64,000 nt of DNA from positions 62,001-126,000 of the forward strand of contig CM074816.1 of NCBI GenBank assembly GCA_037447605.1, in the 5' to 3' direction. Source of the DNA: Zygnema circumcarinatum SAG 698-1b (lineage: Eukaryota > Plantae > Zygnematophyceae). Numbering within the stretch: position 1 is the first letter of the stretch; each line of letters opens with the position of its first letter. The translations under genes were made by a program, and so were the position numbers. The notes below the pieces were generated by a model. The model saw only the letters and a list, made by a program, of their open reading frames with translations. It made no database searches and was not told the origin of the DNA. Positions 1 through 18,500 of the stretch are shown piece after piece.

Positions 1-2643
1 GGTTTGGGCGTCGCTACGGTGACTGGATTGGATCAAGGGTCATATTTAAGAAAGCCATACATTACCAAGCGTTCTGGTTTTTCTGTCGAGGAAAAGGCTT
101 TGGAAACACAACCGGACGCAACTGATACTCTTTGCTACTTTACTCTTGTTCCCGATGGTAATTCGACGGCTCCGAACTGTGGATACAGGGCAAGTCAGGT
201 AATATCACCTTCGTCTACATAACCATTCTGATGCCTGGAGAGGTGAAATAAAAATCTCGGTCACGGAGGTAAGCATTGCTCGCCAATCGTCCTGGCTGCT
301 ATGTGTGCACAACTGCATTGGAACACTCTGATGCCTTGTAAGAAGGCTTTGCGTCCTCCTGACACCCTAACCATTTGAAGACTTCATGAAACTCTGTAGC
401 TCACACCACAAAGACGCTCCTTGGAAGTCAGATAACCCTGTTTGTTTGCAAATATTTATTCTCTATTTCCCTCCTTATAGCGTAACGAGCACGTCCTGCA
501 TCGTTCAGCTGACCATGAAAGGCTCCTGATACAGTCTAGATGATGATCATCTAGAATGCTCAATAAACTGATTTACCGTCCTTATGGACCTTGATGGCTC
601 TTCTTTGTTTTGCAATTGTCAAAGTCACAACTTAGCACAGAGCTTGTTATCGTATGATTCATCGTTTTCATAGGGGCGAGCTGCTTGATAAGCTTTGCAG
701 GATAAAGCGATCATCGCGCTGCCACTTTATGTTTTGGCTGGAATAAAAAGGTGGTGTTATGCTCCTTTTTGCTGCTTGCAGATCCGCACAGCCTACGGAG
801 TTCCATCATGGGCTCAAGGAGAGGGACAATCTGTTGCAATCATTGCTGGTTATGCCTCTCCATTTATACAAAATGATCTCAATACGTGGGCTCGCCAAAT
901 AGGAGAAAACTCCACACAAATCACGAGCTTGTTTCCAGATTACACATACACCTATGAAGAAGCTCTTTTCAACCCAGCACCAGGGTACAACCCGGGTTGG
1001 CAAACTGAGGAGAACCTTGACATAGAGGTAAACAACCTACGCATGATGACTTCCTCCCTTTTGAGGCCTTATCTTTTTCTTTTCTCGAATTGATAAGTAA
1101 CTTCAGGTGAATGGATGAAGCGGTCCCATTTCCTTCAAACGAAAATTTTCGTTATGATGACAGACTGTCCATGGAATAGCTCCCAAGGCATCCATCTTCT
1201 ATATCGGTGCTGCAAGTACGGCCGATTCAGATCTCATTGCCGCCCTTGCTGCTGTTCTTGACTTCGGCCTTGCGACAATCGTAACGAACTCCTACGGGAG
1301 CCCTCTTCCTCCACCTGCTTTACAGGATCCAGCAACTACGATTCGCCAAAACCAGGTACCGGTTTGGCTATTATAAATCTTGCAAATATTCAAGGCAAGC
1401 AATGTTTAGGGACCTCGAGCAGCAGAGAATTGGCCCATGAAAATCGCAGGACATTGTATACAAAAAGGACTTCTCTATTCAGTGAAAACGTTCTTGAGAA
1501 TGTGCTTCATGGAACTCCTGCTTCCTCATTGAGAGAATAAATTCCCATTCATGACAACCACTAATTCGACTTAAGAGTTGAGTTGAGAAGTGATCTTTGC
1601 AACAGGTCTCCTTTCGCACCCAATTCCTTAAAGTTGCAAAACCTTGAAAACTCACTCGCTTTCATGTTGCAGCCATGGACAGATATCCTTATTCAAGCAG
1701 CTGCACAAGGTGTGGGTGTTTACTTTGCTTCTGGTGATTCTGGAGATGATTCCCCGATTTATGGCTATCTAGGATACCATGCGACGGATTACCCTGCCTC
1801 AGATCCATGGGCCATTGCTGTCGGAGGGACTTCGCTGGGAATTTCGGAGGATGGCGGAAGGGAATTTGAGGTGTACTGGGGCAGCCTCAGCCGTAATGCA
1901 ACTTCCCAGACATTTCTAGGTGGCGGTGGAGGTGGAATTTCTGTTTATGGAGTCCCATTTTACCAGGAGGGAAGCAGTGCTGTGACAACATTTCTTGATG
2001 CTTATGGAAACGGTGTTCTGGGCAGGGTAGTTCCTGACATCAGCGGAAATGCAGACCCGACAACAGGGTGAGGATTTTCCACAAAAAAACTGACGTCGTA
2101 AAGCATGCAATTTTCAAGCCATCAAATCTAAAACTTTACTTTACTCAGAATTTAGAACGCTCATGCCTTGAAAAGCTTTCAGCTGCAGCGTGCGCTCGAG
2201 ATACCTGTCCAAACTCCTGTTGCATGCTCCCATCTCCTCTCGTTTTCTCCAGATATTTCATCGGACTCTCTCAAATTGAGTTGGCCCCGGGCACCGACTA
2301 CTACGAAGGTGAAAAGTTCTTGCAGCCAGTGTACGGTAACGATGTCTATGGTGGCACCAGCTTGTCATGCCCAATGATGGCGGCATTCATAGCTTTGGCT
2401 CAGGAAGTCTCTGGACGACAATTCGGATTCATAAATCCGCTTTTATATAGCTTGCCAGCCTCGGCATTCGTTGACATCACCGTCGTTTCTCCGCCAATTC
2501 AGACAAACTCCAGCTCGGGCTCTACCTTACAGTATGGTGAAACCCTCACACTGTCCTCAGTTCCCGGGTATGATGACTCCACAGGCCTCGGAGTTCCAAG
2601 CTTTAACTTTTGGTCTGAATCGTTTTGGAATTCGCTGGCCTAG
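1..2643 (+). CDS. Peptidase S53 family (sedolisin/kumamolisin-like) serine-carboxyl protease; 5' end (signal/pro-domain) lies upstream of the window
   Basis: In-frame GT-AG exons <1-198, 782-1027, 1164-1355, 1673-2067, 2253-2643. Motifs: WQTEENLDIE (Glu/Asp of the Glu-Asp-Ser triad), TVHGIAPKA, ATIVTNSYG, FASGDSGD (oxyanion Asp), YPASDPWAIAVGGTSL, VVPDISGNADP, GGTSLSCP (catalytic Ser), GYDDSTGLGVP (Ca-binding loop). Confidence 0.92.
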
Positions 2644-3840
2644 CTGTGAAATGCAGCCCTTCAAGAAGGTCAGATAACTTCTACTTGCTCATTCTTGAAC
2701 CGAGAATAATGGAGCAGATGGCGAGAACATGATGTTGGGGAAGTTGCCGCAGCATAAATCCTATTCTGTAAACAAGGTAGTTTTGGTTTACTGTGCGTAG
2801 AACAGGAAGGGAGAATTAATCACTGATACCAGGATGAAATTATTATTGATTTCGGGGGGCGAAGATGACCATTGTTCGAGAAAGACAGGAATTTAAACCA
2901 GGGATAGCTTGCAACCATTCTTGGATTCAGGCGGAGAAGTCGACCATTCAGGGCAGGGATAACTTCCAGACAGTCTGAACATGTGAATCAATGCCAGTCC
3001 AGCAGCATGTGAGATGTACATTTCCATTACAATGTTCGAGCTTCTTCTCGTGTTTATAAAATTTCCAGTACATGTCTCCACTGTACTTAACAGAGTATTT
3101 TCCTTCTGAAGCAAGCAATGAAAAAGAACACTAGAACTACAGCTTCGATGTTTCCTGCTTAGAGAGGAGCGGCATAGGAGAAAAAGAGGACATGAATACC
3201 TCCCTAACTTTGGCATAGTATTAACATAACACGATGACGTGACATGACATAACCATGCCTATAGTTCATGTCTGCAGTCTGCTGGACCCCTATCACACAC
3301 TTACAAGAAGTCAAACAATTGAATTTTATTCTTGACCATTTGGTGACTTTCAACAGATTTAAGAACTGGAGCAGCATACAAACCCGTCAATTCACTGAAA
3401 GCAGGCTAAAACTGGCAAAACAGAAAGGACAAATCCTACATATAAAGCAGTCTGGTCTATCCGCATTGAAACTCCCCACGTCTACCAACTCTAAACTCCT
3501 ACACAGACATAAATAGCTTTTGTATTTTTCTCCCACTTTCCTAAAACCCTAAAATTTCAAGCCTAAAGAGACTATGAACTGTAAAAAAGCATAGCAGTGA
3601 ATTTTACCAACGAGTCATCTATGCCACGAGCTATAGCTCCATTGCAGACGCAAGAACAAGTCCCCATAGAAGAATGTCTTCGTACCTTCAGCACCAAATG
3701 AATAGCGGCTCCTACAATTTCTAGGACTCCCTATAAGCAGCTGCAGGCGAACCTACACCCCTCCTAATTTTCTCCTAATCAAAACCTAAAAGCAGAAAAG
3801 AAAAACTATTTTTTTAAGTTTTATTCACACCAAAACTGGC

Positions 3841-6800
3841 TCATGGAACCGCTGCTTGTGCTGGTGTGGGCTCTGCTTCCTCCCTCTCTGAAAGAGAATG
3901 GCTGAGTCCGTTTGAAGTCAGATTGGTGTCCTCCCCACCATTGCTAGGTTTGGCTTTGCAGTCATAGGTTCGGCGGTAAAGGGCGTCCACTCCCGCAAGG
4001 AAGAAGGTGCCCGGCCTCAAATTTTCAAGGGAGGTTGAAGGTATGAAATCGCAGGCTCCATAGCGCTTCTCCATGAGCTCCATGGTGCTAACAAACTCTT
4101 CCGGCGGCACCTGTAGACGGTAGGCCAACAAAACCATCTTTCTTCTATGTTCATGTCCAGTTCCGTTGACATAGAAACAAAAACATATTTCAATGTTCAT
4201 GTCTAGTCCTGTTGCTGAAGTGAAAACAAGGCCAAGTTTCTATGTTCATATTTAGTTCCGTTCACATGAGCCACGCAGTCCAAACCTAGTCTGGAGATGT
4301 ACTGAATCTTTCGAACGCACTCAGGAACTCAAAGTATCCTGAAACCCTCAAAAAGTTAAACCCTAAAAATGTTTCCATGGACTCTCAGACGAACCTTCAC
4401 TCGAGTCGCCAGCAACGTTGGCACGTCGATGGCCTCCACGAGTCGGCTGAAGGTAAAGGGAGGAGAGACTTTTTGAACTTGGAAGGAGAACATGGATGCA
4501 ACTAACCCACTGCCGTACGAGAACATGAGTATCCTCTTCCCCTCCTGCACCGACCACTCCCACCCTCCCTCAGTCATCGCTCCTCCAGTCTCCTCCTTCC
4601 AATTCATCTCATGTAAAGGAAGAAGCAGAAACGTGAGCATCTGCAGATTGCTTGCGTTCCGGGGTCTTTAACGATCCTAAATAATTTAAGAAAAATAGCA
4701 AATCTTTAGGGTTTAAGTGTGGTTCAACTCACCGAGTTGGGTCCCATTTGCCAAAGCAGAGAGGCAAGGCTGACATAGAGAGAAGCTGTGTAGCTATTTC
4801 CCGTCTGTTTGGGGAGAATAGTGGAGGGGGCGACCTTAGCCGCATAAGAGCTCTTTGAAGCTTGCATGGCTGCCTGCTCCCCTCTCCCTTCCACTCGATC
4901 ACCTTCATGTCCACACATGTTTACTATGTATGCATGCGTACAACAAGTGCATATAATGTGTACAATGTATTGTGTGTACATGACATGCATGAGCAACCCA
5001 CCTTTTCTAAATCTCGGTCTGTATAGCTCTCCTCTTCAGACATGCTTTTGAAACGCTCCCACGATGAGGTGTCTTCAACTCCGTCTACTCTGTCCAAAGA
5101 AAGAGAATTTCACATATACCAAAAATGAGATAAGGGCGGCGGCAAGGGTCATAGCAGCTCCCCGAGCCTGTGTGAAGTGAGACGAGGAAGAGCGAGAGGG
5201 AGGGACAGAGGAAAGGAGTGAGGGAGAGGGGGAGAGAGCGAGCGAGAAAGAGAGAGGGGGAGAGGGAGAGAGAGAGAGAGGGAGGGAGAGAGAGACTACC
5301 TTCCTAATCGTAGGAAGTCGTTGTAGAGAAGTCTGGCGAAGCTTTTTTGGACAAGCTGCCACCCAAACAAATGTTTCACAAACTCAAAACATTGCTTCCT
5401 CCTGTTCATAATGCATTCTTTAAATTAGGACATGGGGTTTTAGGGTTTGCTTAACAAAATTGGGACTCCCATGGCTTTTGAAAGCTCTTCTGTTCTTCAC
5501 TACTGAAAAGCCTCGTTCCATCTTCCTAAATATGATACACTCCGATCTAAATAACTCTTTAGACTTCCCCCGTTACATGCAGTTCCAATTCTATGGTCCA
5601 GTTTCCATTGAAACAGAACTGACTCACCTTATTGTACGGACTATGAAACGCCACATAATCTGTATCTTTCAGCGAAAATGACTCACCCTCCTGCTTCTTG
5701 AATCTGTTTTCAAATCAACACCAAAATCGCTGCCCCCGAATTAAGCCCCTTACAAAGTGAGGTTTCAGGATTCCGGAACAGTTACTTTTAGAGTTTCCCG
5801 GGTATCTCGGGGTTTTAAGCTGAAAACTTTAGGCCAAGCAGGAGTACAGAAACCTACTTGGAGCAGAACCCTGCATAGCATTTGTCCAGCGCCTTCAAGT
5901 AGCATGTCTGCGATAGCTTTCCATCCACCACCTAGCAAGTCACCACCACAACGACGGTCAGAAAGAGAGATAGGCCGAGAAAGAGAGAGAGAGAGAGAGA
6001 GTGAGAGAGTGAGTGAGTGAGAGGGAGAGAGAGAGTGAGTGAGTGAGTGAGTGAGTGAGTGAGTGTGAGTGACTGACAGAGTGAGTGTGACATACGTGGG
6101 CTCGGTCTGAGAGAGAGAGAGAGAGAGGAGACGAGATAGAACGAAGAGAGAGTGGTACAGAGAGAGGGGAGAGAGAAGAGGGAAGGGAGAGGGAGAGGGA
6201 GAGGGGGAGCGGGAGAGAGGGAGAGTACTCACTGGGTACTCGCTGGCCAGCTGCGGCTTATAGAAGTCGTACACGTGTGCTGCGTGCGTGGCAGAGAGGG
6301 AGCGGTGCATGGCGAGCGGCGCGTTGGGGCCCACCAAGAGGGCCACTGCGCCGGCGCCACCTGTCGGCCTCGCAGGGCCCTCTGCGTACACCTGGCAGCA
6401 CCTCACAGGTCAGGAGAGTGAGGAGGGACAGAGAGAGAGAGGGAGAGAGAGAGAGAGAGNNNNNNNNNNGAGAGAGGGGGGGGGGGGGCAGGAAAGACAA
6501 GACTCCATGGCAGAGCTTCTGGCGAAGTTCTTGCACTTGTTTTTGATTTACATGGGAGATAGCGGTCCTAAGCCTGCAACCCTAAACCCTAAACCCTAAA
6601 CTGCCAAAGATTGTGAAGTTACCGCGCTGTCTGCTGCCACAACGATGGCGTAACGGCCGTCCCATGCGGAGCTCTCTATCCAGTTGAGAGCGTTGAGGAG
6701 AGCAGCCGTCCCGCCATAGCACGCGTTCGTGGAGTCCACTCCTTCAATGTCGGAATTTCCGCTTTTCTGCACATTACCAAAAGCAAAACAGAGCGCATAC

Positions 6801-9251: not shown

Positions 9252-10254
9252 CTGCAGAAGGAACTTCTTCGTATTCCGTTACAAATCGAAATAAGTAATC
9301 CAAAGATATAGTTATCGGCCAGCAACAGAGTATGCAATCTAAGTTCAATTAAGTACTACTGAAAATCATTTCCCGTTCGATTCCTGCTAGGTCTGACACG
9401 CCCACTGTCAAGCCCATCCGTGTCAGAGCGCCCTCGCTGTGTCAGTTCAGTTCCCAGTTGAGCTACGAGCTCCATGCGTTCCCGTAATATAACGTGGCAG
9501 TCCAGGAGTGGCTGCTTACACCTGTCACGGCGCAACGTGATTGGCCGGAGCGGGAGGCACATTTTGTGGGCGCCGGGGTCTGTCCGAGTTTTTAGCATTT
9601 TTTTTTGTGGCTGTGACGTCATCTCGACATTTGTCCAAGGAATCGATCGTTCGAAAGTTTCGAACCTGGCGTCACTTTTTGTCGGATCGCGTCAGCGCGC
9701 CCTGTGCAGTGTCTGTCGGTGGCGCATCGACCCGTCACGGCCGTTCGCCTGCCCCAACCGTCGGTTCGGTTCGGCTCGGTTCGGTTGCTTCGGTCAGCGC
9801 GCCAGAGGGGACGAGGCATTTGTCGTTTGTGAGGCTTGAAGTTGGATCGATCGGGGCCGTGTTTCTCGTGGTTTCTCATGATGATTTTGTCCATAAACAT
9901 GTGATGCCATTGCCATGGTGAAATCAATGACATATCCCTCCTACGACGTAGCTTCAACTCGAAAGCATAAGGGAACCCTAATTCACTTTCTGAAATCTCT
10001 CTCGTACAATCGTTTGTGGAGCTTTACATGGACCACCGAACCATGTGAACAACTTACGCGAGTTTCTAGTTTTGTTCAACATTGTGTTGTTCAACATGCT
10101 CACAGCATAGACACCGTCTTTGCTTCACGCTACAACGAGGTTCTATGTAGCAATTCCCGTTCGATTCTACAGCACAGAGCCGCATAGAACCTGCAGGCTG
10201 CCCGCCCGCCAACCGAACCCACTACTGACAAATGCTGACTTGTCAGAGCTCCTT

Positions 10255-10345
10255 CATTTTGACACGTGGCAGGCATGCTGACGCATCAACCTCCATCGCA
10301 CGCCACATCAGAAAAAAAGATCCGTGACCTTCCACGTGTCAGCTC
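10255..10345 (+). promoter_or_regulatory. ABRE/G-box-like motifs upstream of the lysozyme-like gene
   Basis: tgacacgtggcag (~10259) and ccacgtgtcag (~10332) match the ACGTG(G/T)C ABRE core, 230-310 bp upstream of the ATG. Function is untested. Confidence 0.3.
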
Positions 10346-10572
10346 CAGACGGCCCTGCGCAGTCTCCAGAACTTCCACTATCTCCCCTGCCAGGAAAACA
10401 ATCAATCGCCTTGATCTTGTCTGGCCAATCCACACCTTACACGTAGCCGGTCAGCTACAGAAAAGTTACTTATCTGCCCGTACGCTCTCATATAAGTTCC
10501 TGCACCCTTTTCATTGTTGAAGCGTTCTCTATTTGTCCCCCTCTTGATAGACGAGCTTCCTGAAAGGCAGAC

Positions 10573-12199
10573 ATGGCGGCCATGGTGAAGTCCACAGGAG
10601 CTCTCCCGTTATGGGCACCTCTCCTTCCCTTCCTCCTCCTCGCTGCTGTGAGCGCTGTCCATGGGGGCATCGTTGACAGCTTGCAGAGCCAGCTGAGTGA
10701 CACGTGGAGCCGGCTTAGAGGGGAGAAGCCTGTGCTTGCGGGCACCACTCTGTGCATTCCCACGGCGGCAAAGGTGTTGGAGAACCACGAGGGCCGACAT
10801 AGCTGCGCGTACGATCACCCCAGCGGGTACCGCGCAGTGGGGGCGGGCTACAACTTGGATGCGGACAGAGACAGGGCGAGGGGGGAGCTCAGAACCGCGC
10901 TTGCTGACTATGATAAGGTGGGCTTCAGGGAGGTGCTTTTAGCTCCTCTTTAGTGATCAGATGGGGTTGAAATGATTTCGTTCTTGGTAGAGTATTGGAG
11001 TTGAAATGGGTATTTAATGGGGTTTTTGTGTTTTAAACTGCTATGGATGAGGGGGGGGGGGGGGGGGGGGGGNNNNNNNNNNGGGGGGGGGGGCGATTTT
11101 TTTTAGCTGTTTGTATTTTTTTATTCTGCTGCTTTTTATGGAGATTGATTTGAACGATGCTTCCACCCTCTTTTTCATAATTTAATGGTTTCTATGACGC
11201 TGTTACGTGATGCAGGTGTACAAGGGCAAGAGCTGCTTGAACAGTGTCCAGATTTCTGCGCTTCTGGCTCTTGATGCACGACGGGTACGCTCTGGGCTCA
11301 CAGTAACTATTTTCCACGAATCGTTTGTGCTAACTAACTGTTTAAGTAGTTAACTGACTAATCAACAAACTAACTAACTAATAGAACAAATAGAACTCGT
11401 ACTGGAATTAATCTGCATGCCAGCAAGGTAATAAAACTTCGACAAGAATCCTGCTTATCGAGTAATGCGAGAAAGGTCTGTTTGCAAGCCGGGCCGGAAA
11501 GCGATTAAGAATGAAAAGGAAATGTTTTTAAAATCAGATCATTTTCGAGGGAATTGGTTGTGGCCGCGGATTTCCTGATCCTTGCTTTAGAGCACCAGTG
11601 GAGATGCGCATCTTCTAAGTATTTTTCATTTCATTTCATTATTTTGCATCTTTGCATTGTTTTCTTAACTGAAATCTTGCAAAATTTTGGTGATTCTAAA
11701 TTATTTTTCGCTGTGTTTGGATGGTACTGCAGGCCTTGAACGCTGCTGCGGAGGAGGTGAAGGCCCTGGACGAGTGGTGCTGTGACGTACAGGCGGCCTT
11801 TGCTGACGTCGCCTTTGCTTCCGGTGAGAAGCTCACTCCATTCACCACTCCTTCGCTTCAAACATTTTCCAAAAGCAATTGTCTCCAACCTTTCTGTTCG
11901 ATTCAGACGTTAATGTAAAGCTTTTATTGTTCCAATATCCTTTCTCTAATATACTACTGCTCCTATTCCTGTAATGCTTTCTCCTCCTTTAAAATGCAGG
12001 TCAAAAGCAACTTCGAAGCAAGGAGTTCGGTAGCATCACTGCCTTTGCCCGCGAGGAGAAGTGGGAGAAAGCCGCCGATGAGCTCCGCGAGGCAAGTTGG
12101 TGTTCGAGCCATCGAAAGAGGTGCGAAGGAGACGAGGATGCCATCCGGAAGGGATGCGGATATGGCCATGGGGGGGAAGCCATGCCCATCATCGTCTAG
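10573..12199 (+). CDS. Secreted T4-phage-type (GH24-like) lysozyme-fold protein, 234 aa, Cys-rich
   Basis: Exons 10573-10917, 11216-11284, 11733-11823, 12000-12199 (GT-AG, phases 0,0,1; 705 nt). Hydrophobic signal peptide. HEGRHSCAYDHPSGYRAVGAGYNL aligns to T4L [33 protein letters not shown] aligns to the AL.NMVFQMG helix; EKWEKAADELREASWCSSHRKRC aligns to [23 protein letters not shown]. Confidence 0.85.
11073..11082. other. Assembly gap (10 N) within a poly-G run in lysozyme intron 1
   Basis: Run of N flanked by G homopolymer. Confidence 0.99.
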
Positions 12200-13535
12200 G
12201 AATACGGTTATTCGCTCTGGTAGAAAAGGAGGGGGGGGACTTGTGGGAGAGGGTTGTGTGTGAGATAAAGGAGAGGGAGTGGAGTGGAAAGGGAGAGGGG
12301 AGATGGGAGAGAGGGGGGGGAAGGAAGAGGAGGGAAATGGGAGGGGGAGGGAGGGAGTGAGGAGGGAGAGATGGGAGGGAGAGGAGGTTAACATTTTGGA
12401 GCTTTGCTTTCTCGTGCATGGGGAGGAGGGAGTGTACACTAGTTTGGGTATGTGCAGTGTGAATAGAGAAAGTGGCAGGCAGCAGGCAGGTTGTCCCTTT
12501 GTACGGTATGCAGGTTTTGGGGTTGAGTGGGACAATTGCCATTTTGTGTCATTGCCAAGAGGGGTTGAGATGCGGCCTTAGGCGATAATCCATAATTGTA
12601 TTAAAAAGCAGTTTTTTTTAACAATCTGAAAGTTGTACTTTTCGTCTTCTGCCGTTTCCTTGGCCGATCATTCGTATGCCCTCATCACAAAAGATATAAG
12701 TTCAAAGGACTGACCCTCAACTGTCTTCAGCCACCGCACATAAAACATTCCGGGACTCAATGCCACATGCGATAAAGTAAATAGTAGTAATATATTAAAC
12801 CCTAAAAATAATAATGAGAAGGTAAGCCAAGCCCTGAACTCAGGCAGTCGTACCCGCCCCTTCATTCCGATTACTTTTCCCCACAAGCTGTGAGTAAAGC
12901 TACTTGACATGCCATCATCTAGTAGGGGAAGTCAGATCTTGACCATCGCTTACGAAATTCCCGAATTCCTTATACTAAAAGTCACTTCGTTCGTGTACGA
13001 ATTCCGGGTCGGGATCCGCGGCTACTGAGAGTCCTGCTGTACCGAAATGCGTACCTAGCCAATGCTTAATTCGCCCTACAGGCTTACGAAATTGATTTGG
13101 CGATGGTCAAGGTCTGACTCCCCCTATTCCCGCCGGCCGGCTTGATCAATACAGTGAATCACTTCAAAAAAAATTCCGCCCGGTCGCCGGCCGGCCAACG
13201 GCGTAAAAACAGCCGGTTTGAAGACCGCCGGCACAGTTCCAGCCTGGCCGACTATGTATTACGTGTCGCAATGTGACTGGTCCACGTGGCAGGCATTTTA
13301 TTTCCCTACAACATTGGACTATCGGCTCTTTTTTTTGTTCAGGTGAGAATTGCGCCAATACGAGCAGGCCACGTGCTACCTTTGGACACGGGGTCTTCTC
13401 TGATTGGCTTGGCTCCCCTGGTACCTTGCAGGAAGCCCTTGCTTGCTCCCTTCGAAGAGGGAGGAAAGGGGAGAGGAGAGGAGAAGGAGAAAGGGCCATC
13501 CCTTGCAGGAGGGAGGAGGAGCTTGGAAGGAAGGA

Positions 13536-15498
13536 ATGGCGCCCGTGGACCCGCACTCCTTCACAGACGGCAGCCAGCCCTTCACCGCCGCGGTGGACCT
13601 GCACCTCAAGATCGACTTCGCGCAGAAGCTCATTGCGGGGACGGCCACTCTGCACCTCGCGGCCAAGGCGGGCCTCCATCTTGAGCTTCATCTTCATTCA
13701 CCTTGCTTCCAGTTTTCCTGATTCGTTGTTGTCTCTTTCGTGTATACAGAACACGATTTTTTTTTTCATGAAAATCCAGGGAATTTTCAGACATGTTGCC
13801 GTCGGAGGCATCTTTGCGTGACCTTTATCATTACTTCAGCGGTTTCTTTTCTATCCTCTATTTTTATTTTTATTTCCGGTGCTCCTTTTCTTTCCATTCC
13901 GCTGAGAAGTAAACTATTCATGCATGCACGGATGCAGGCTGAAGGCATCCTGAACCTCGATACAAGAGGCTTGATCATTGAAGGCGCTAAAGACAGTGCT
14001 GGAAATGAAGGTAAGCAGAGGTCAATGTCATCAGACCAGTAGAACCATTCTTTAGTTGTTCCTTAAAATCATTATTTCCATAGCATCATTTACAGCTGTC
14101 TTGAATTTTTCTTTAAAATGGCTGCGAATGCAGACGTCGTAGGTGAATAGCAGCATCTAGTCTGAATGACCTTGGCAGTGCAGCCTGGAAATAGTTTCGG
14201 TTCGTGTGAACCTATCGACAATATTTGAAGCTGCACACAGAGGGTCGGTTATTAAGAAAGTGTCTTCTGTAGCTGTCGTCGGACATTATCAATTTATATG
14301 GCATTAAATAAGTTTCTTGCTTGTCAAAGCTAAGTTAGAAAATGATTGGAATAACATCATCAAAACGCCGCTCATTGTTTGCACGTTTATGTAAGGTGGA
14401 GTGTATCAATAAGAAATGAGCAAATAGTGAAGATGAACTTAAAACCTGCAATTCAGAAAGTCATTGCATGTGTGTAACCCTCTCTCTCTCTCTTCCTCCC
14501 TCCCTCCCTCCCTTCCTTCCTTTTTCTTTAAGCACGTCAAGCTCAACGATGGATGGTAAGCAGTCCATTTTTTCGACCTGTCTAACTCCTTTTTTCGGCG
14601 TGCAGTGAAATTTGAGCTGGAAGAACCTGGAGATCCCATCAAGGGAACGCTTCTGAAGGTCTTTCTGAATGACGATAAGGTCTCCATCAGTGGGTCTTCG
14701 TGCCTTGCACTATCATCTTGTCACAAAAGAACTATCTCGCAAGTTACCGTTGAATCATAGGGAAGGAAAGGGAAAGAGAAGGGGAAGTAATTCTAGGGTG
14801 TTGGTCACTTTTTTGGGGGGACACAGCCTACAAGACGACAGCAAGGCGACTGCCTTGCAATGGTTAGAACCTTCACAAACTGCGGGCGGAAAACAGCCCT
14901 ATGTGTTCACTCAATGCCAGCCAATTCACGCTCGGTCAGTGTTTCCATGTCAGGATACACCGCAGGCACGTATCAAATATAAAGGTAAAGTCCCAAGTCC
15001 TTTTCAAATGCTTGAAAACTTCCTAAATTTCCTCTTTAAAGCCGACAAGGCTTTCCTGAGGATCCATTTTCCTTCTTTGCAGACTTCTGTCAAATCTCTC
15101 TCCCTCTTTTGAGCGTTATCGATGTTTCTGTCAGTATATAATGGAGCTTTCTCAATTCAACAATGAGCTTAACCGGTTCATGCGAAGCGAAACAACTTTT
15201 TCTTGTCATGCAAAACAAAAGCAGCATAACTGGACAGGTGTTCGAGATTCAGCTGTTTCCTGTCATACATGTTCACTCCCAATGCTGAAACCACTCACTC
15301 TGTTCGCTGTGCTCCCTCTGCAGCTCGTGTTGAGGTTCAAAAGGACACACGAGTAGTGATGAGTGCAGCTCATGTTCGTCGTGAAGAAAGCGAGGACTTC
15401 GCAACTGAATTCTTCGACATGGAACAGGCTATTCCGCCGTATCTGTTTGCTTTAGCAGCCGGCGATATTGTATTTGAAGACCTGAGCACACGCTCTCG
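13536..15498 (+). pseudogene. Partial direct duplicate (exons 1-5) of the LTA4H gene, ending at an N gap; probably an unmerged contig overlap
   Basis: 13525-15498 repeats at 15509-17484 (offset 1984, then 1986) and is truncated by 10 N at 15499-15508. It carries a -1 indel in exon 4 relative to the intact paralog. Confidence 0.6.
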
Positions 15499-15519: not shown

Positions 15520-18500
15520 ATGGCGCCCGTGGACCCGCACTCCTTCACAGACGGCAGCCAGCCCTTCACCGCCGCGGTGGACCTGCACCTCAAGATCGAC
15601 TTCGCGCAGAAGCTCATTGCGGGGACGGCCACTCTGCACCTCGCGGCCAAGGCGGGCCTCCATCTTGAGCTTCATCTTCATTCACCTTGCTTCCAGTTTT
15701 CCTGATTCGTTGTTGTCTCTTTCGTGTATACAGAACACGATTTTTTTTTTCATGAAAATCCAGGGAATTTTCAGACATGTTGCCGTCGGAGGCATCTTTG
15801 CGTGACCTTTATCATTACTTCAGCGGTTTCTTTTCTATCCTCTATTTTTATTTTTATTTCCGGTGCTCCTTTTCTTTCCATTCCGCTGAGAAGTAAACTA
15901 TTCATGCATGCACGGATGCAGGCTGAAGGCATCCTGAACCTCGATACAAGAGGCTTGATCATTGAAGGCGCTAAAGACAGTGCTGGAAATGAAGGTAAGC
16001 AGAGGTCAATGTCATCAGACCAGTAGAACCATTCTTTAGTTGTTCCTTAAAATCATTATTTCCATAGCATCATTTACAGCTGTCTTGAATTTTTCTTTAA
16101 AATGGCTGCGAATGCAGACGTCGTAGGTGAATAGCAGCATCTAGTCTGAATGACCTTGGCAGTGCAGCCTGGAAATAGTTTCGGTTCGTGTGAACCTATC
16201 GACAATATTTGAAGCTGCACACAGAGGGTCGGTTATTAAGAAAGTGTCTTCTGTAGCTGTCGTCGGACATTATCAATTTATATGGCATTAAATAAGTTTC
16301 TTGCTTGTCAAAGCTAAGTTAGAAAATGATTGGAATAACATCATCAAAACGCCGCTCATTGTTTGCACGTTTATGTAAGGTGGAGTGTATCAATAAGAAA
16401 TGAGCAAATAGTGAAGATGAACTTAAAACCTGCAATTCAGAAAGTCATTGCATGTGTGTAACCCTCTCTCTCTCTCTTCCTCCCTCCCTCCCTCCCTTCC
16501 TTCCTTTTTCTTTAAGCACGTCAAGCTCAACGATGGATGGTAAGCAGTCCATTTTTTCGACCTGTCTAACTCCTTTTTTCGGCGTGCAGTGAAATTTGAG
16601 CTGGAAGAACCTGGAGATCCCATCAAGGGAACGCTTCTGAAGGTCTTTCTGAATGACGATAAGGTCTCCATCAGTGGGTCTTCGTGCCTTGCACTATCAT
16701 CTTGTCACAAAAGAACTATCTCGCAAGTTACCGTTGAATCATAGGGAAGGAAAGGGAAAGAGAAGGGGAAGTAATTCTAGGGTGTTGGTCACTTTTTTGG
16801 GGGGACACAGCCTACAAGACGACAGAACAAGGCGACTGCCTTGCAATGGTTAGAACCTTCACAAACTGCGGGCGGAAAACAGCCCTATGTGTTCACTCAA
16901 TGCCAGCCAATTCACGCTCGGTCAGTGTTTCCATGTCAGGATACACCGCAGGCACGTATCAAATATAAAGGTAAAGTCCCAAGTCCTTTTCAAATGCTTG
17001 AAAACTTCCTAAATTTCCTCTTTAAAGCCGACAAGGCTTTCCTGAGGATCCATTTTCCTTCTTTGCAGACTTCTGTCAAATCTCTCTCCCTCTTTTGAGC
17101 GTTATCGATGTTTCTGTCAGTATATAATGGAGCTTTCTCAATTCAACAATGAGCTTAACCGGTTCATGCGAAGCGAAACAACTTTTTCTTGTCATGCAAA
17201 ACAAAAGCAGCATAACTGGACAGGTGTTCGAGATTCAGCTGTTTCCTGTCATACATGTTCACTCCCAATGCTGAAACCACTCACTCTGTTCGCTGTGCTC
17301 CCTCTGCAGCTCGTGTTGAGGTTCAAAAGGACACACGAGTAGTGATGAGTGCAGCTCATGTTCGTCGTGAAGAAAGCGAGGACTTCGCAACTGAATTCTT
17401 CGACATGGAACAGGCTATTCCGCCGTATCTGTTTGCTTTAGCAGCCGGCGATATTGTATTTGAAGACCTGAGCACACGCTCTCGTGTTCATGCAGGTATT
17501 TTTTTTACTTTCTAATCTCTAATCTAGTCGGTAATCTTCTGTCAGTGAGCTATAATGCACATCCCTCCCTCCCATATTCAAAATTGAGCTTCCCATCATC
17601 GCAACTCCTCCCTCTCTTCCTCTCTCTCTCTCTCTCTCTCTCCCTCTCTCGCTCTCTCTCTCTCTCCCTCCCTCTCTCTCTCTCCACATGGCGGTCATTT
17701 GCAGAGCCCTCTGTGGTGAAAGCTGCCGCGTACGAGTTCGCAGAAGCGGAAACAATGATCGAGACCGCTGAAAAGTTGTTTGGTAAATATGAGTGGGATC
17801 GTTTTGACCTGCTGGTGATGCCCCCCTCCTTCCCGTACGGCGGCATGGAGAATCCGCGAATGACCTTCCTCACTCCCACAGTGATAGCGGGAGACCGCTC
17901 GCTGGTGGGAGTGGTCGCGCATGAGCTCGCGCACAGTTGGACGGGCAACCTTGTCACGAATGCATCCGCTAATGATTTTTGGCTCAATGAGGTGAGTGAG
18001 CCGGTTCATTTTTGGATTTAGCATCACCGATTGTATGGAAAACGTCGGCTAAGTCGAAGGAGGGATAAGTTGATGAGTCGATTTCCGACAGCATGTGTTC
18101 AAGTCCTGTAAACAGTTCTGCAAGCTCTGTTCATGATAGAACTGAAATGAAGGGACAGGAAAATTTGGTTACAAAGACACAGTGTTGTCTAATGCATATA
18201 CTGGCCATCATCTCCCTGCTCGATCTAAGTCGCTTGTCTCCGACTTACCATCTTTAACTTCCGTGAAATCAACAGCCGTTAACTTAACTGATATACTATG
18301 TCAGCATCATATGAAAATCAGTATGCTGCAATAGTGTCGGTTCAAAGTCATGCTTTGTTTGATGCAAGTTCTATGTTAATCGTAGAAATTTCTCTAGCTT
18401 TCCCTCTCTCTCAATCCACGATTCACCCTCCCATTCCGTCCCTCTCCAGGGGTGGACCACGTATGCGGAACGGCGCATTCAGGAAGCTATGGAAGGTGTA

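What the first reader, a model, noticed from the sequence alone, without database searches (positions are those of the whole stretch)
10573..12199. Secreted T4-type lysozyme in a green-lineage genome with two of three catalytic residues changed
Seen: signal peptide, a T4L/GH24-like fold across four exons, and 8 Cys in the mature part. Aligned without gaps to T4 lysozyme, Glu11 is kept but Asp20 becomes His (an Asp is shifted to position 19) and Thr26 becomes Ala (EGRHSCAYDHPSGYRAVG). Established: T4L uses E11/D20/T26, and Cys-rich secreted T4-like lysozymes are known from bacterivorous protists, while land plants are not known for this family. Inference: either a muramidase with rewired chemistry or a non-catalytic peptidoglycan-binding sensor or effector shaping the algal microbiome. 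This is the best candidate for an undescribed system in the window.
Basis: partly seen in the sequence, partly recalled or inferred. Interest (0 to 1): 0.78.

Follow-up and report, generated by a model that had tools for sequence, protein, structure and literature searches.

The report
Secreted T4-lysozyme-like protein, altered active site
This is a real, expressed four-exon gene for a secreted, disulfide-rich protein with the fold of phage T4 lysozyme; its unstudied family, found in streptophyte algae, liverworts and Sphagnum, keeps the catalytic glutamate but never has the other two classic catalytic residues.

Summary
The gene has four exons on the + strand (10573-10917, 11216-11284, 11733-11823, 12000-12199; 705 nt, 234 aa). 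The N gap lies inside intron 1. Spliced contigs from three public runs (two studies) remove exactly these three GT-AG introns and match the window letter for letter. The His and Ala codons are therefore not assembly errors.

Single exons hit nothing in Pfam or PDB. A profile of about 50 relatives hits T4 lysozyme (E 2.6e-4). An AlphaFold model of the closest relative matches T4 lysozyme (Z 17, rmsd 2.6 Å over about 150 residues).

In 50-51 aligned family rows:
- The Glu11 position is Glu in 45 and Asp in 6.
- The Asp20 position is never Asp.
- The Thr26 position is never Thr.
- The Arg145 partner and eight Cys are mostly kept.

Members occur in Chara, Closterium, Spirogloea, Marchantia, Riccia, Calypogeia and Sphagnum. 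I found none in vascular plants, viruses or prokaryotes. Two introns are shared with Sphagnum.

The most likely function is a secreted peptidoglycan-cleaving enzyme that works with the Glu alone or at reduced activity. A non-catalytic binding role remains a serious rival. No paper describing the family was found. This scan had already noted a paralogue on another piece of the same genome.

The parts
10490..10495 (+). TATA-like ATATAA, about 45 nt upstream of the 5' ends of two transcript contigs (inferred promoter element)
   Evidence: Sequence read directly. Contigs of X1 and X3 begin at 10537 and 10542. A contig of X2 runs further upstream, past 10400, so the transcription start is not settled.
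10573..10917 (+). [quoted passage not shown]
   Evidence: Donor GT at 10918. The joint 10917 to 11216 is seen in three runs.
10573..10665 (+). Signal-peptide-like segment, residues 1-31 (the cleavage site is approximate)
   Evidence: Hydrophobicity profile. All full-length relatives have a similar N-terminus. UniRef names two Riccia members 'Secreted protein'. In the model of P0001 this part has low confidence and lies outside the domain.
10789..10791 (+). Glu73 codon (GAG), at the T4 lysozyme Glu11 position (general acid)
   Evidence: Alignments. Family column: Glu 45, Asp 6.
10816..10818 (+). His82 codon (CAC), at the T4 lysozyme Asp20 position
   Evidence: Family column: His 28, Ser 8, Leu 8, Lys 4, Thr 1, Glu 1, never Asp. 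Transcript contigs are identical here.
10834..10836 (+). Ala88 codon (GCA), at the T4 lysozyme Thr26 position
   Evidence: Family column: Ala 45, Gly 4, Cys 1, never Thr. Transcript contigs are identical here.
10918..11215 (+). Intron 1 (phase 0, after Lys115), containing the assembly gap 11073-11082 within a poly-G tract
   Evidence: An intron at the same position and phase occurs in Sphagnum fallax.
11216..11284 (+). Exon 2: residues 116-138, with Cys3
11285..11732 (+). Intron 2 (phase 0), not present in Marchantia, Sphagnum or Chara
11733..11823 (+). Exon 3: residues 139-168 plus the first base of the Gly169 codon, with the Cys-Cys pair
11824..11999 (+). Intron 3 (phase 1, inside the Gly169 codon)
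   Evidence: Same position and phase in Sphagnum fallax; one codon further on, same phase, in Marchantia polymorpha.
12000..12199 (+). Exon 4 (coding part): residues 169-234 and the stop codon, holding the C-terminal lobe helices and Cys6-Cys8
12119..12121 (+). Arg209 codon, at the T4 lysozyme Arg145 position. That Arg145 pairs with Glu11 in T4 lysozyme is from my own memory of the structure.
   Evidence: Alignments. Family column: Arg 38 of 43.
12200..12500 (+). 3' untranslated region, at least to 12500, purine-rich and of low complexity
   Evidence: A contig of X2 covers 11999-12500 and runs on beyond. Sequence.

Best explanation
The locus is an intact, transcribed nuclear gene for a 234-aa protein. 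The protein has an N-terminal signal peptide, a short linker, and a roughly 165-residue domain with the two-lobed fold of phage T4 lysozyme (GH24, viral type), probably braced by four disulfides. It belongs to a vertically inherited family restricted to streptophytes (Charophyceae, Zygnematophyceae, liverworts, Sphagnum). Since its origin this family has kept the general-acid Glu, its Arg partner and the beta-hairpin glycines, and has lacked the Asp20 and Thr26 residues of the T4 triad. I infer that the protein enters the secretory pathway and acts outside the cell or in an acidic compartment on bacterial peptidoglycan. There it would cleave the glycan strand using the single conserved Glu, either as a slow 'attenuated' muramidase like SpmX or by Glu-only chemistry like lambda-type lysozyme, goose-type lysozyme or GH184 enzymes. 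Its likely role is antibacterial defence or release of peptidoglycan fragments. Shown: gene structure, expression, fold, family, residue pattern. Inferred: secretion, substrate, activity, biological role.
For: Gene and expression: (three exact splice joints in three runs from two studies; high word depth of spliced contigs against about 10 for intron-bearing ones). Fold: the family profile hits T4 lysozyme over profile 61-215 = T4L 5-156, E 2.6e-4. The AlphaFold model of relative P0001 has core pLDDT above 90. Foldseek puts T4 lysozyme first with probability 1.00 and TM about 0.74. VIA-align gives T4L Z 17.0, other GH24 enzymes 12-14.5 and chitosanase 8.2. ESM Atlas neighbours are all PF00959 clusters. 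PF00959 and the PHROG T4 gp5/endolysin families give sub-threshold hits. Constraint on the catalytic centre: Glu 45 of 51, Arg145-equivalent 38 of 43, Tyr18 50 of 50, Gly28 50 of 50, across lineages as far apart as Chara and liverworts. Precedents for activity without Asp/Thr: SpmX (Glu11 kept, D20L, T26X) retains reduced muramidase activity (bioRxiv 10.1101/418723); lambda-type GH24 has no general base and Asp97 of GH23 is only partly conserved (PMC2976769 Table 2); in GH184 and phi29 gp13 the Asp position is Gly and the Glu is essential (PMC10394673). Secretion: hydrophobic N-terminus in all members and eight conserved Cys, with Cys2 and Cys3 lost only together in 12 Riccia paralogues, which indicates a disulfide. 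Eukaryotic co-option of phage-type lysozymes for antibacterial use has a precedent in bivalves (PMC5303276).
Against: No activity data exist for any member. The Glu-X8-(Asp/Cys)-X5-Thr motif, reported in all structurally characterised T4L-like endolysins (PMC8228626), is not met. Position 20 of T4 lysozyme tolerates only Cys or Ala. One moss-type clade has Asp in place of the Glu (6 rows), and Closterium lacks the Arg partner, so catalysis is not strictly required in every member. The domain is acidic (pI 4.6-5.7, against 9.6 for T4 lysozyme), unlike typical cationic bacteriolytic lysozymes. The structure was predicted for the relative P0001 (56-80% identical per exon), not for the window's own joined protein. 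Model coordinates could not be inspected, so the geometry of the cleft is unverified.
Confidence: 0.5

Rival explanations
1. The protein is a non-catalytic peptidoglycan-binding (or other glycan-binding) protein. A domesticated lysozyme fold would serve as a secreted sensor, lectin, decoy or scaffold, with the Glu and Arg kept for ligand binding or fold stability.
For: Two of the three triad residues are absent in every member. There are Glu-to-Asp rows, and rows lacking the Arg. The pI is acidic, unlike lytic lysozymes. The Riccia paralogue expansion, with disulfide loss, resembles diversifying recognition proteins. In SpmX the remodelled domain mainly serves localisation.
Against: The Glu is the best-conserved polar residue of the cleft over a very deep divergence (45 of 51). 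The closest precedent, SpmX, is still active and needs its Glu. Glu-only lysozyme-superfamily enzymes exist.
Confidence: 0.28
2. The protein is an active glycosidase on a substrate other than peptidoglycan, such as chitin or chitosan of fungi, or a polysaccharide of the organism's own wall.
For: The lysozyme superfamily includes chitinases and chitosanases with the same core, and a GH46 chitosanase is a weaker structural match (Z 8.2). The T4-specific catalytic and some cleft residues have changed (Gln105 position is Ala, followed by an invariant Asp).
Against: The structure is much closer to T4 lysozyme and other GH24 muramidases (Z 12-17) than to GH46. All ESM Atlas neighbours are phage lysozymes.
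Confidence: 0.13
3. The protein is an endogenous remodelling enzyme for the peptidoglycan layer that streptophyte algae and bryophytes retain around their plastids.
For: The family occurs only in lineages that, by established knowledge, keep plastid peptidoglycan synthesis genes.
Against: An ER-type signal peptide and eight Cys point to the secretory pathway, not the plastid. No member was found in other lineages that, by my own knowledge, keep plastid peptidoglycan, such as Physcomitrium, hornworts, lycophytes and ferns.
Confidence: 0.04
4. The feature is an artefact: a contaminant, a pseudogene, or a misassembly across the N gap.
For: The locus contains an assembly gap, and a phage-like fold in a eukaryotic genome could suggest contamination.
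Against: Spliced transcripts in three runs are identical to the window. There are three spliceosomal introns, two shared with Sphagnum. The neighbours are ordinary eukaryotic genes, HMG-CoA synthase and M1 aminopeptidase. The reading frame is intact and the residues are conserved. Family motifs gave no match in viral, bacterial or archaeal collections.
Confidence: 0.01

Closest known systems
Phage T4 lysozyme (gene e product; GH24 viral type, Pfam PF00959)
   Same: It has the same two-lobed fold over the whole domain (Z 17, rmsd 2.6 Å over about 150 residues). The following are in the same register: the Glu at the end of helix A, Tyr18, the Gly28/Gly30 hairpin, Phe104, Trp126, Trp138 and Arg145.
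   Different: Asp20 is His and Thr26 is Ala, and neither position is ever Asp or Thr in the family. It carries a signal peptide and eight Cys. It is acidic rather than basic (pI about 5 against 9.6). It is a spliced nuclear gene. Sequence similarity falls below the Pfam gathering score (17-19 against 22.3 bits).
SpmX muramidase domain of Caulobacterales (PDB 6H9D), a co-opted and 'detoxified' phage GH24 domain
   Same: It is a GH24 fold taken over by a cellular lineage (Z 12.3). Glu11 is conserved while position 20 (Leu) and position 26 (variable) have lost the triad residues. It retains attenuated, Glu-dependent activity (bioRxiv 10.1101/418723).
   Different: SpmX is the N-terminal domain of a bacterial membrane-anchored polarity protein. 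It has lost Tyr18 and has no disulfides. The streptophyte protein is a stand-alone secreted domain that keeps Tyr18.
Eukaryotic secreted GH24 lysozymes: bivalve co-opted phage lysozymes, and fungal GH24 muramidase (Trichophaea saccata, PDB 8B2S)
   Same: These are phage-type lysozyme folds resident in eukaryotic nuclear genomes. They have acquired introns and undergone duplication (PMC5303276). The fungal enzyme is a structural match (Z 12.3).
   Different: Those enzymes are demonstrated muramidases. The streptophyte family lacks the Asp and Thr, has its own eight-Cys pattern, and is untested.
Glu-only members of the lysozyme superfamily: lambda-type lysozyme (a lytic transglycosylase), goose-type GH23 lysozyme, and GH184 / phi29 gp13
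   Same: Their active sites rely on one essential Glu with no conserved general base (PMC2976769 Table 2; PMC10394673). This is the chemistry I propose here.
   Different: They belong to different sequence families and differ in fold detail. The streptophyte domain is structurally a T4-type domain, not a lambda-type or goose-type one.

Membership tests
GH24 viral-type (T4-lysozyme-like) lysozymes | Two-lobed T4-lysozyme fold, with the catalytic Glu at the end of the first helix and a beta-hairpin facing the cleft | tested here: met
   The model of the closest relative P0001 (core pLDDT above 90) matches T4L at Z 17.0, rmsd 2.6 Å over 151 residues, and by Foldseek with probability 1.00. The window's exons align to P0001 without indels in the domain. 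The window's own joined protein was not folded.
GH24 viral-type (T4-lysozyme-like) lysozymes | Significant match to Pfam PF00959 Phage_lysozyme (gathering score 22.3 bits) | tested here: not met
   The window's exons give no hit. Relatives give 17.1-19.2 bits (E 0.0017-0.007) in 2 of 14 members scanned, and nothing in the rest. The family profile does hit T4 lysozyme in PDB at E 2.6e-4.
GH24 viral-type (T4-lysozyme-like) lysozymes | Catalytic general-acid Glu (T4L Glu11) | tested here: met
   Window Glu73 (10789-10791). Family column: Glu 45, Asp 6.
GH24 viral-type (T4-lysozyme-like) lysozymes | Asp or Cys eight residues after the Glu (T4L Asp20), part of the Glu-X8-(Asp/Cys)-X5-Thr motif (PMC8228626) | tested here: not met
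   Window His82. The family column is never Asp or Cys. Motif definition.
GH24 viral-type (T4-lysozyme-like) lysozymes | Thr five residues further on (T4L Thr26), which positions the catalytic water | tested here: not met
   Window Ala88. Family column: Ala 45, Gly 4, Cys 1.
GH24 viral-type (T4-lysozyme-like) lysozymes | Muramidase activity on peptidoglycan | not testable with these tools
   This needs recombinant protein and peptidoglycan digestion assays.
Streptophyte T4-lysozyme-like family (unnamed; members include Marchantia polymorpha MPTK1_5g10000, Chara braunii CBR_g48602, Sphagnum fallax BDL97_17G008200) | Shared domain with the family motifs (Cys-Ile/Val-Pro, His-Glu-Gly-Arg, Arg-Ala-Val-Gly-x-Gly-Tyr-Asn-Leu-Asp, Asp-Tyr-Asp-Lys-Val-Tyr, Cys-Cys, Phe-Ala-Asp, Trp-Cys, Arg-Cys, Gly-Cys) and eight Cys | tested here: met
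   Exon 1 finds 20 true relatives at E 1.5e-23 to 3.9e-4 (two further hits are repeat proteins). All four exons align in order to full-length members at 51-80% identity to P0001. All eight Cys columns are filled.
Zincin metalloproteases (His-Glu-x-x-His motif) | His-Glu-x-x-His within a helix of a zincin fold, plus a third zinc ligand | tested here: not met
   The window has His72-Glu73-Gly-Arg-His76, but the motif is present in only 25 of 51 family rows. The fold is T4 lysozyme, with the helix ending at the Glu. I take this as a chance motif.

The most novel reading that the evidence does not exclude
The family is a mechanistically new subclass of T4-type lysozymes and the ancestral secreted antibacterial glycosidase of streptophytes. 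It would have been acquired before Charophyceae, Zygnematophyceae and land plants diverged, and later lost in vascular plants. It would cleave peptidoglycan with Glu73 plus a relocated carboxylate, or as a lytic transglycosylase. Candidate carboxylates are the near-invariant Asp of the Tyr-Asn-Leu-Asp motif and the Asp of the Phe-Ala-Asp motif beside the Gln105 position.
Probability: 0.25. Interest if true: 0.7.

Novelty: new variant of a known kind. Interest (0 to 1): 0.55.

Why it matters
Plants are not known to use phage-type (GH24) lysozymes; the one plant peptidoglycan hydrolase I know of (Arabidopsis LYS1, from memory) is a chitinase-type enzyme. This locus shows an old, vertically inherited, expressed family of secreted T4-lysozyme-fold proteins in the algal relatives of land plants and in bryophytes. 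The family is unannotated and, as far as the searchable literature goes, undescribed.

If active, it would be a natural test of how much of the T4 triad is really needed, with more than 50 natural sequences that have Glu only. It could also be a component of early plant antibacterial defence that vascular plants later lost. If inactive, it would be a eukaryotic parallel to the bacterial SpmX case, where a lysozyme fold was turned into a binding module. Marchantia polymorpha has a single clear orthologue, which makes the question directly testable by knockout.

Tried and rejected
- Single-exon searches. Pfam on each exon and PDB phmmer on exon 1 and exon 4 gave nothing meaningful. The exons are too short and too diverged.
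- Word-indexed search with the 126-aa read-through ORF. It found nothing, because full-length relatives fall outside its length window.
- Two hits of the exhaustive search. P0003 (1950 aa, 25 stretches, not inspected) and P0021 (876 aa, 6 stretches, a repetitive protein when read) are taken as spurious.
- hhalign against the single T4 sequence. It gave a low probability (3.6%, E 0.012), as expected for a one-sequence template. I used it only to confirm the register.
- Scans for relatives outside streptophytes. Alignment A1 was too gappy. With A2 there were no relatives in viral contigs or in bacterial and archaeal genomes.
- Paralogues in the window. None found.
- Asp81 as a shifted catalytic Asp. 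Rejected because the column is Asp, Asn, Glu, Lys or His.
- His-Glu-x-x-His metalloprotease reading. Rejected.
- Literature searches. No paper links GH24 with streptophytes, bryophytes or Mp5g10000.
- Closterium gene structure. It could not be fetched.
- Organism identity. It was not determined. Run names are coded, and earlier notes of the scan call the organism a green alga, which I did not verify.
Full report
**Gap and gene model.** Read on the + strand, the region holds an ATG at 10573 and four exons with canonical GT-AG borders: 10573-10917, 11216-11284, 11733-11823 and 12000-12199. Together they give 705 nt in frame, or 234 aa. The assembly gap (11073-11082) lies in a poly-G tract inside intron 1, so it does not touch coding sequence.

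I laid contigs of public runs on 10400-12500. Three runs from two studies carry spliced contigs that skip exactly 298, 448 and 176 nt at the predicted borders. One 717-nt contig spans 10537-12175 through all three joints with no differing letter. No variant letters were reported anywhere. The gene is therefore transcribed and spliced as modelled. Exons 1 and 2 are continuous in the mRNA despite the gap. Spliced contigs have word depths of about 1000-3500 in two runs, against about 10 for intron-bearing contigs. This suggests good expression, but contig depth is only a rough guide.

**The protein.** Residues 1-31 look like a signal peptide: Lys6, then an uncharged hydrophobic core, then small residues. 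No dedicated predictor was available. The rest holds eight Cys, at residues 61, 78, 122, 154, 155, 203, 210 and 221. The mature part has a net charge of about -3.

**Is it like T4 lysozyme?** From the window alone this cannot be shown. Each exon searched on its own gave nothing in Pfam or PDB.

- An exhaustive HMMER search with exon 1 found a small family, 22 hits of which two are spurious repeat proteins. Word-indexed searches with the closest relative and with a family profile brought the set to about 50 sequences.
- The four window exons align in order, without indels in the domain, to full-length members. Identity to P0001 is 56, 74, 80 and 51% per exon. No exon is hidden in the gap.
- A profile of this alignment hits T4 lysozyme as the best PDB family (E 2.6e-4, profile 61-215 = T4L 5-156).
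- Individual members give sub-threshold PF00959 hits of 17-19 bits against a cut-off of 22.3. They also give weak PHROG hits to T4 gp5-type tail lysozyme and to endolysin.
- An AlphaFold model of P0001 built with the family alignment is confident over the domain (pLDDT above 90 for residues 51-217). Its best structural matches are T4 lysozyme entries: Foldseek probability 1.00 and TM about 0.74, and VIA-align Z 17.0 with rmsd 2.6 Å over about 150 residues.
- Other GH24 enzymes follow: P22 lysozyme at 13.6, SpmX at 12.3 and fungal GH24 at 12.3. Only then comes chitosanase at 8.2.
- ESM Atlas neighbours, by shape and by language-model features, are all phage-lysozyme clusters.

The fold assignment is secure for the family. 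It applies to the window protein by close homology.

| Window residue | T4 lysozyme position |
|---|---|
| Glu73 | Glu11 |
| Asp81 | Lys19 |
| His82 | Asp20 |
| Ala88 | Thr26 |
| Arg209 | Arg145 |

The family columns are as follows (51 rows).

| T4L position | Residues found |
|---|---|
| Glu11 | Glu 45, Asp 6 |
| Asp20 | His 28, Ser 8, Leu 8, Lys 4, Thr 1, Glu 1 (never Asp) |
| Thr26 | Ala 45, Gly 4, Cys 1 (never Thr) |
| Lys19 | Asp 32, Asn 12, Glu 3, Lys 2, His 1 |
| Arg145 | Arg 38 of 43 |

Tyr18, Gly28, Phe104 and Trp138 are almost invariant. The loss of Asp20 and Thr26 is therefore an ancient property of the whole family, not a peculiarity of this gene. The 'shifted Asp' is not a conserved substitute.

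The motif Glu-X8-(Asp/Cys)-X5-Thr is described as present in all structurally characterised T4-like endolysins (PMC8228626). It is not met here.

The family has its own near-invariant acidic residues. One is the Asp of Tyr-Asn-Leu-Asp, at T4L position 34. Another is the Asp of Phe-Ala-Asp, next to the Gln105 position.

**Disulfides.** Of 38 rows that cover all eight Cys columns, 26 have all eight. Twelve Riccia paralogues lack Cys2 and Cys3, always together. This indicates a Cys2-Cys3 bond, Cys78-Cys122 in the window protein. The other pairings are not established.

**Distribution and history.** Named members come from these taxa:

- Chara braunii
- Closterium (two tandem domains in one protein)
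- Spirogloea muscicola
- Marchantia polymorpha and M. paleacea
- Riccia fluitans and R. sorocarpa (many paralogues, some from consecutive gene numbers)
- Calypogeia fissa
- Sphagnum fallax and S. jensenii

All are annotated 'hypothetical' or 'unnamed'. The exception is a JGI pair auto-named GH24 lysozyme.

No vascular plant, chlorophyte or non-plant sequence appeared in the exhaustive search. Scans with family motifs found no relatives in viral contigs or in bacterial and archaeal genomes.

A maximum-likelihood tree puts the algal sequences on one side. On the other it places the window gene plus P0001 as sister to a bryophyte clade, which splits into a Sphagnum group and a liverwort group. 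This broadly follows the species tree (only exon 1 of the window gene was used).

Gene structures vary:

- The Chara gene is intronless.
- Sphagnum shares the window's intron 1 (phase 0, after Asp-Tyr-Asp-Lys) and intron 3 (phase 1, in the Gly codon).
- Marchantia has an intron of the same phase one codem further on than intron 3 — that is, one codon downstream.
- Several short database entries end in read-through right after Asp-Tyr-Asp-Lys-Val, as expected if that intron is widespread.

The neighbours in the window are ordinary nuclear genes: HMG-CoA synthase upstream on the - strand and an M1 aminopeptidase downstream. There is no paralogue in the window. All this points to an old, vertically inherited nuclear gene. 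Its ultimate source (phage, bacterium or other) is undetermined.

**Mechanism.** Shown: the fold, the conserved Glu and Arg pair, the conserved hairpin, and the loss of Asp and Thr. Inferred: function.

Three published precedents make Glu-only or attenuated cleavage plausible.

- The SpmX domain keeps Glu11, has Leu at position 20 and variable residues at 26, and still hydrolyses peptidoglycan weakly. It needs its Glu in vivo (bioRxiv 10.1101/418723).
- Lambda-type lysozyme has no general base, and the Asp of goose-type lysozyme is only partly conserved (PMC2976769).
- In GH184 and phi29 gp13 the Asp position is Gly and the Glu is essential (PMC10394673).

I therefore rate a secreted, Glu-dependent peptidoglycan-cleaving enzyme as the most likely reading (about 0.5).

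Several points weigh against it. In T4 lysozyme, position 20 tolerates only Cys or Ala. One moss-type clade has Asp for the Glu. Closterium lacks the Arg. The domain is acidic (pI 4.6-5.7), whereas T4 lysozyme is basic (9.6). These facts keep a non-catalytic binding role alive (about 0.28). Activity on another glycan (about 0.13) and a role on plastid peptidoglycan (about 0.04) are less likely. The plastid idea is weakened by the secretory signal, the disulfides, and the absence of hits from other lineages that also keep plastid peptidoglycan.

**Comparison and novelty.** By fold, this works like a T4-type GH24 domain. By the family's usual criteria it fails three tests: the Pfam threshold, Asp20 and Thr26. 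I therefore file it as a new variant of a known kind rather than a plain member.

I found no paper that links GH24 with streptophytes, bryophytes or the Marchantia gene. Subscription journals are not covered by that library.

This scan had already noted a two-exon paralogue on another piece of the same genome, with the same conclusion (note s1-350934). My results agree with it and add several things: the splice evidence for this locus, the wider family census including Sphagnum and Marchantia, the shared introns, the disulfide covariation, and the residue statistics.

**Limits.**

- The structure is that of a relative.
- No coordinates could be inspected.
- Secretion is inferred from sequence alone.
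- The organism was not identified.
- All functional statements are inferences.

Noticed in passing
window 10786-10800: The catalytic Glu sits inside a His-Glu-Gly-Arg-His string, which matches the zinc-protease His-Glu-x-x-His motif. Only 25 of 51 family rows have it, and the fold is not a zincin, so it is probably chance. Even so, up to three His (72, 76, 82) cluster near the Glu in this protein.
   Followed up: partly
window 11040-11095 and 12215-12400: A long poly-G tract flanks the assembly gap in intron 1. The 3' UTR is a purine-rich (G/A) low-complexity stretch, and some contigs break or mis-join there (table 5c).
   Followed up: no
window 10207-10572 (approximate): One transcript contig (run X2) extends at least 193 nt upstream of 10400, while contigs of X1 and X3 start at 10537 and 10542, just downstream of a TATA-like ATATAA at 10490. 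This could be two transcription starts, or read-through from upstream.
   Followed up: no
window 5765-6403 (-), 14669-15109 (+) and 17545-18018 (+): The neighbouring ORF pieces match HMG-CoA synthase (- strand, upstream) and an M1-family aminopeptidase (+ strand, downstream). Both are ordinary eukaryotic genes.
   Followed up: partly
relatives P0017, P0030-P0032, P0045-P0049, P0051-P0053 (Riccia): Riccia fluitans and R. sorocarpa carry many paralogues, several from consecutive gene numbers on one chromosome (R1flu_026328 to 026334). Twelve of them have lost Cys2 and Cys3 together.
   Followed up: partly
relatives P0002, P0033, P0034 (Closterium): The Closterium proteins hold two tandem copies of the domain in one polypeptide, and both copies lack the Arg145-equivalent.
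   Followed up: no
L003:3001-3909 (Chara braunii): The Chara member is intronless and has a long acidic N-terminal extension. Its T4L Lys19 and Asp20 positions are Glu and Thr.
   Followed up: no
relatives P0004, P0006, P0016, P0036, P0038, P0039: One clade that groups with Sphagnum sequences in the tree has Asp instead of the catalytic Glu (His-Asp-Gly/Ala/Lys-Arg). These paralogues may be inactive.
   Followed up: no
C-termini of the window protein (12170-12196) and relatives: After the last Cys, many members end in a short hydrophobic tail (for example Pro-Ile-Ile-Val here). It is loosely reminiscent of the C-terminal vacuolar sorting peptides of plant chitinases. This is a speculation from memory and was not tested.
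   Followed up: no
family domain as a whole: The domain is acidic in every member tested (pI 4.6-5.7), the opposite of T4 lysozyme (pI 9.6).
   Followed up: partly
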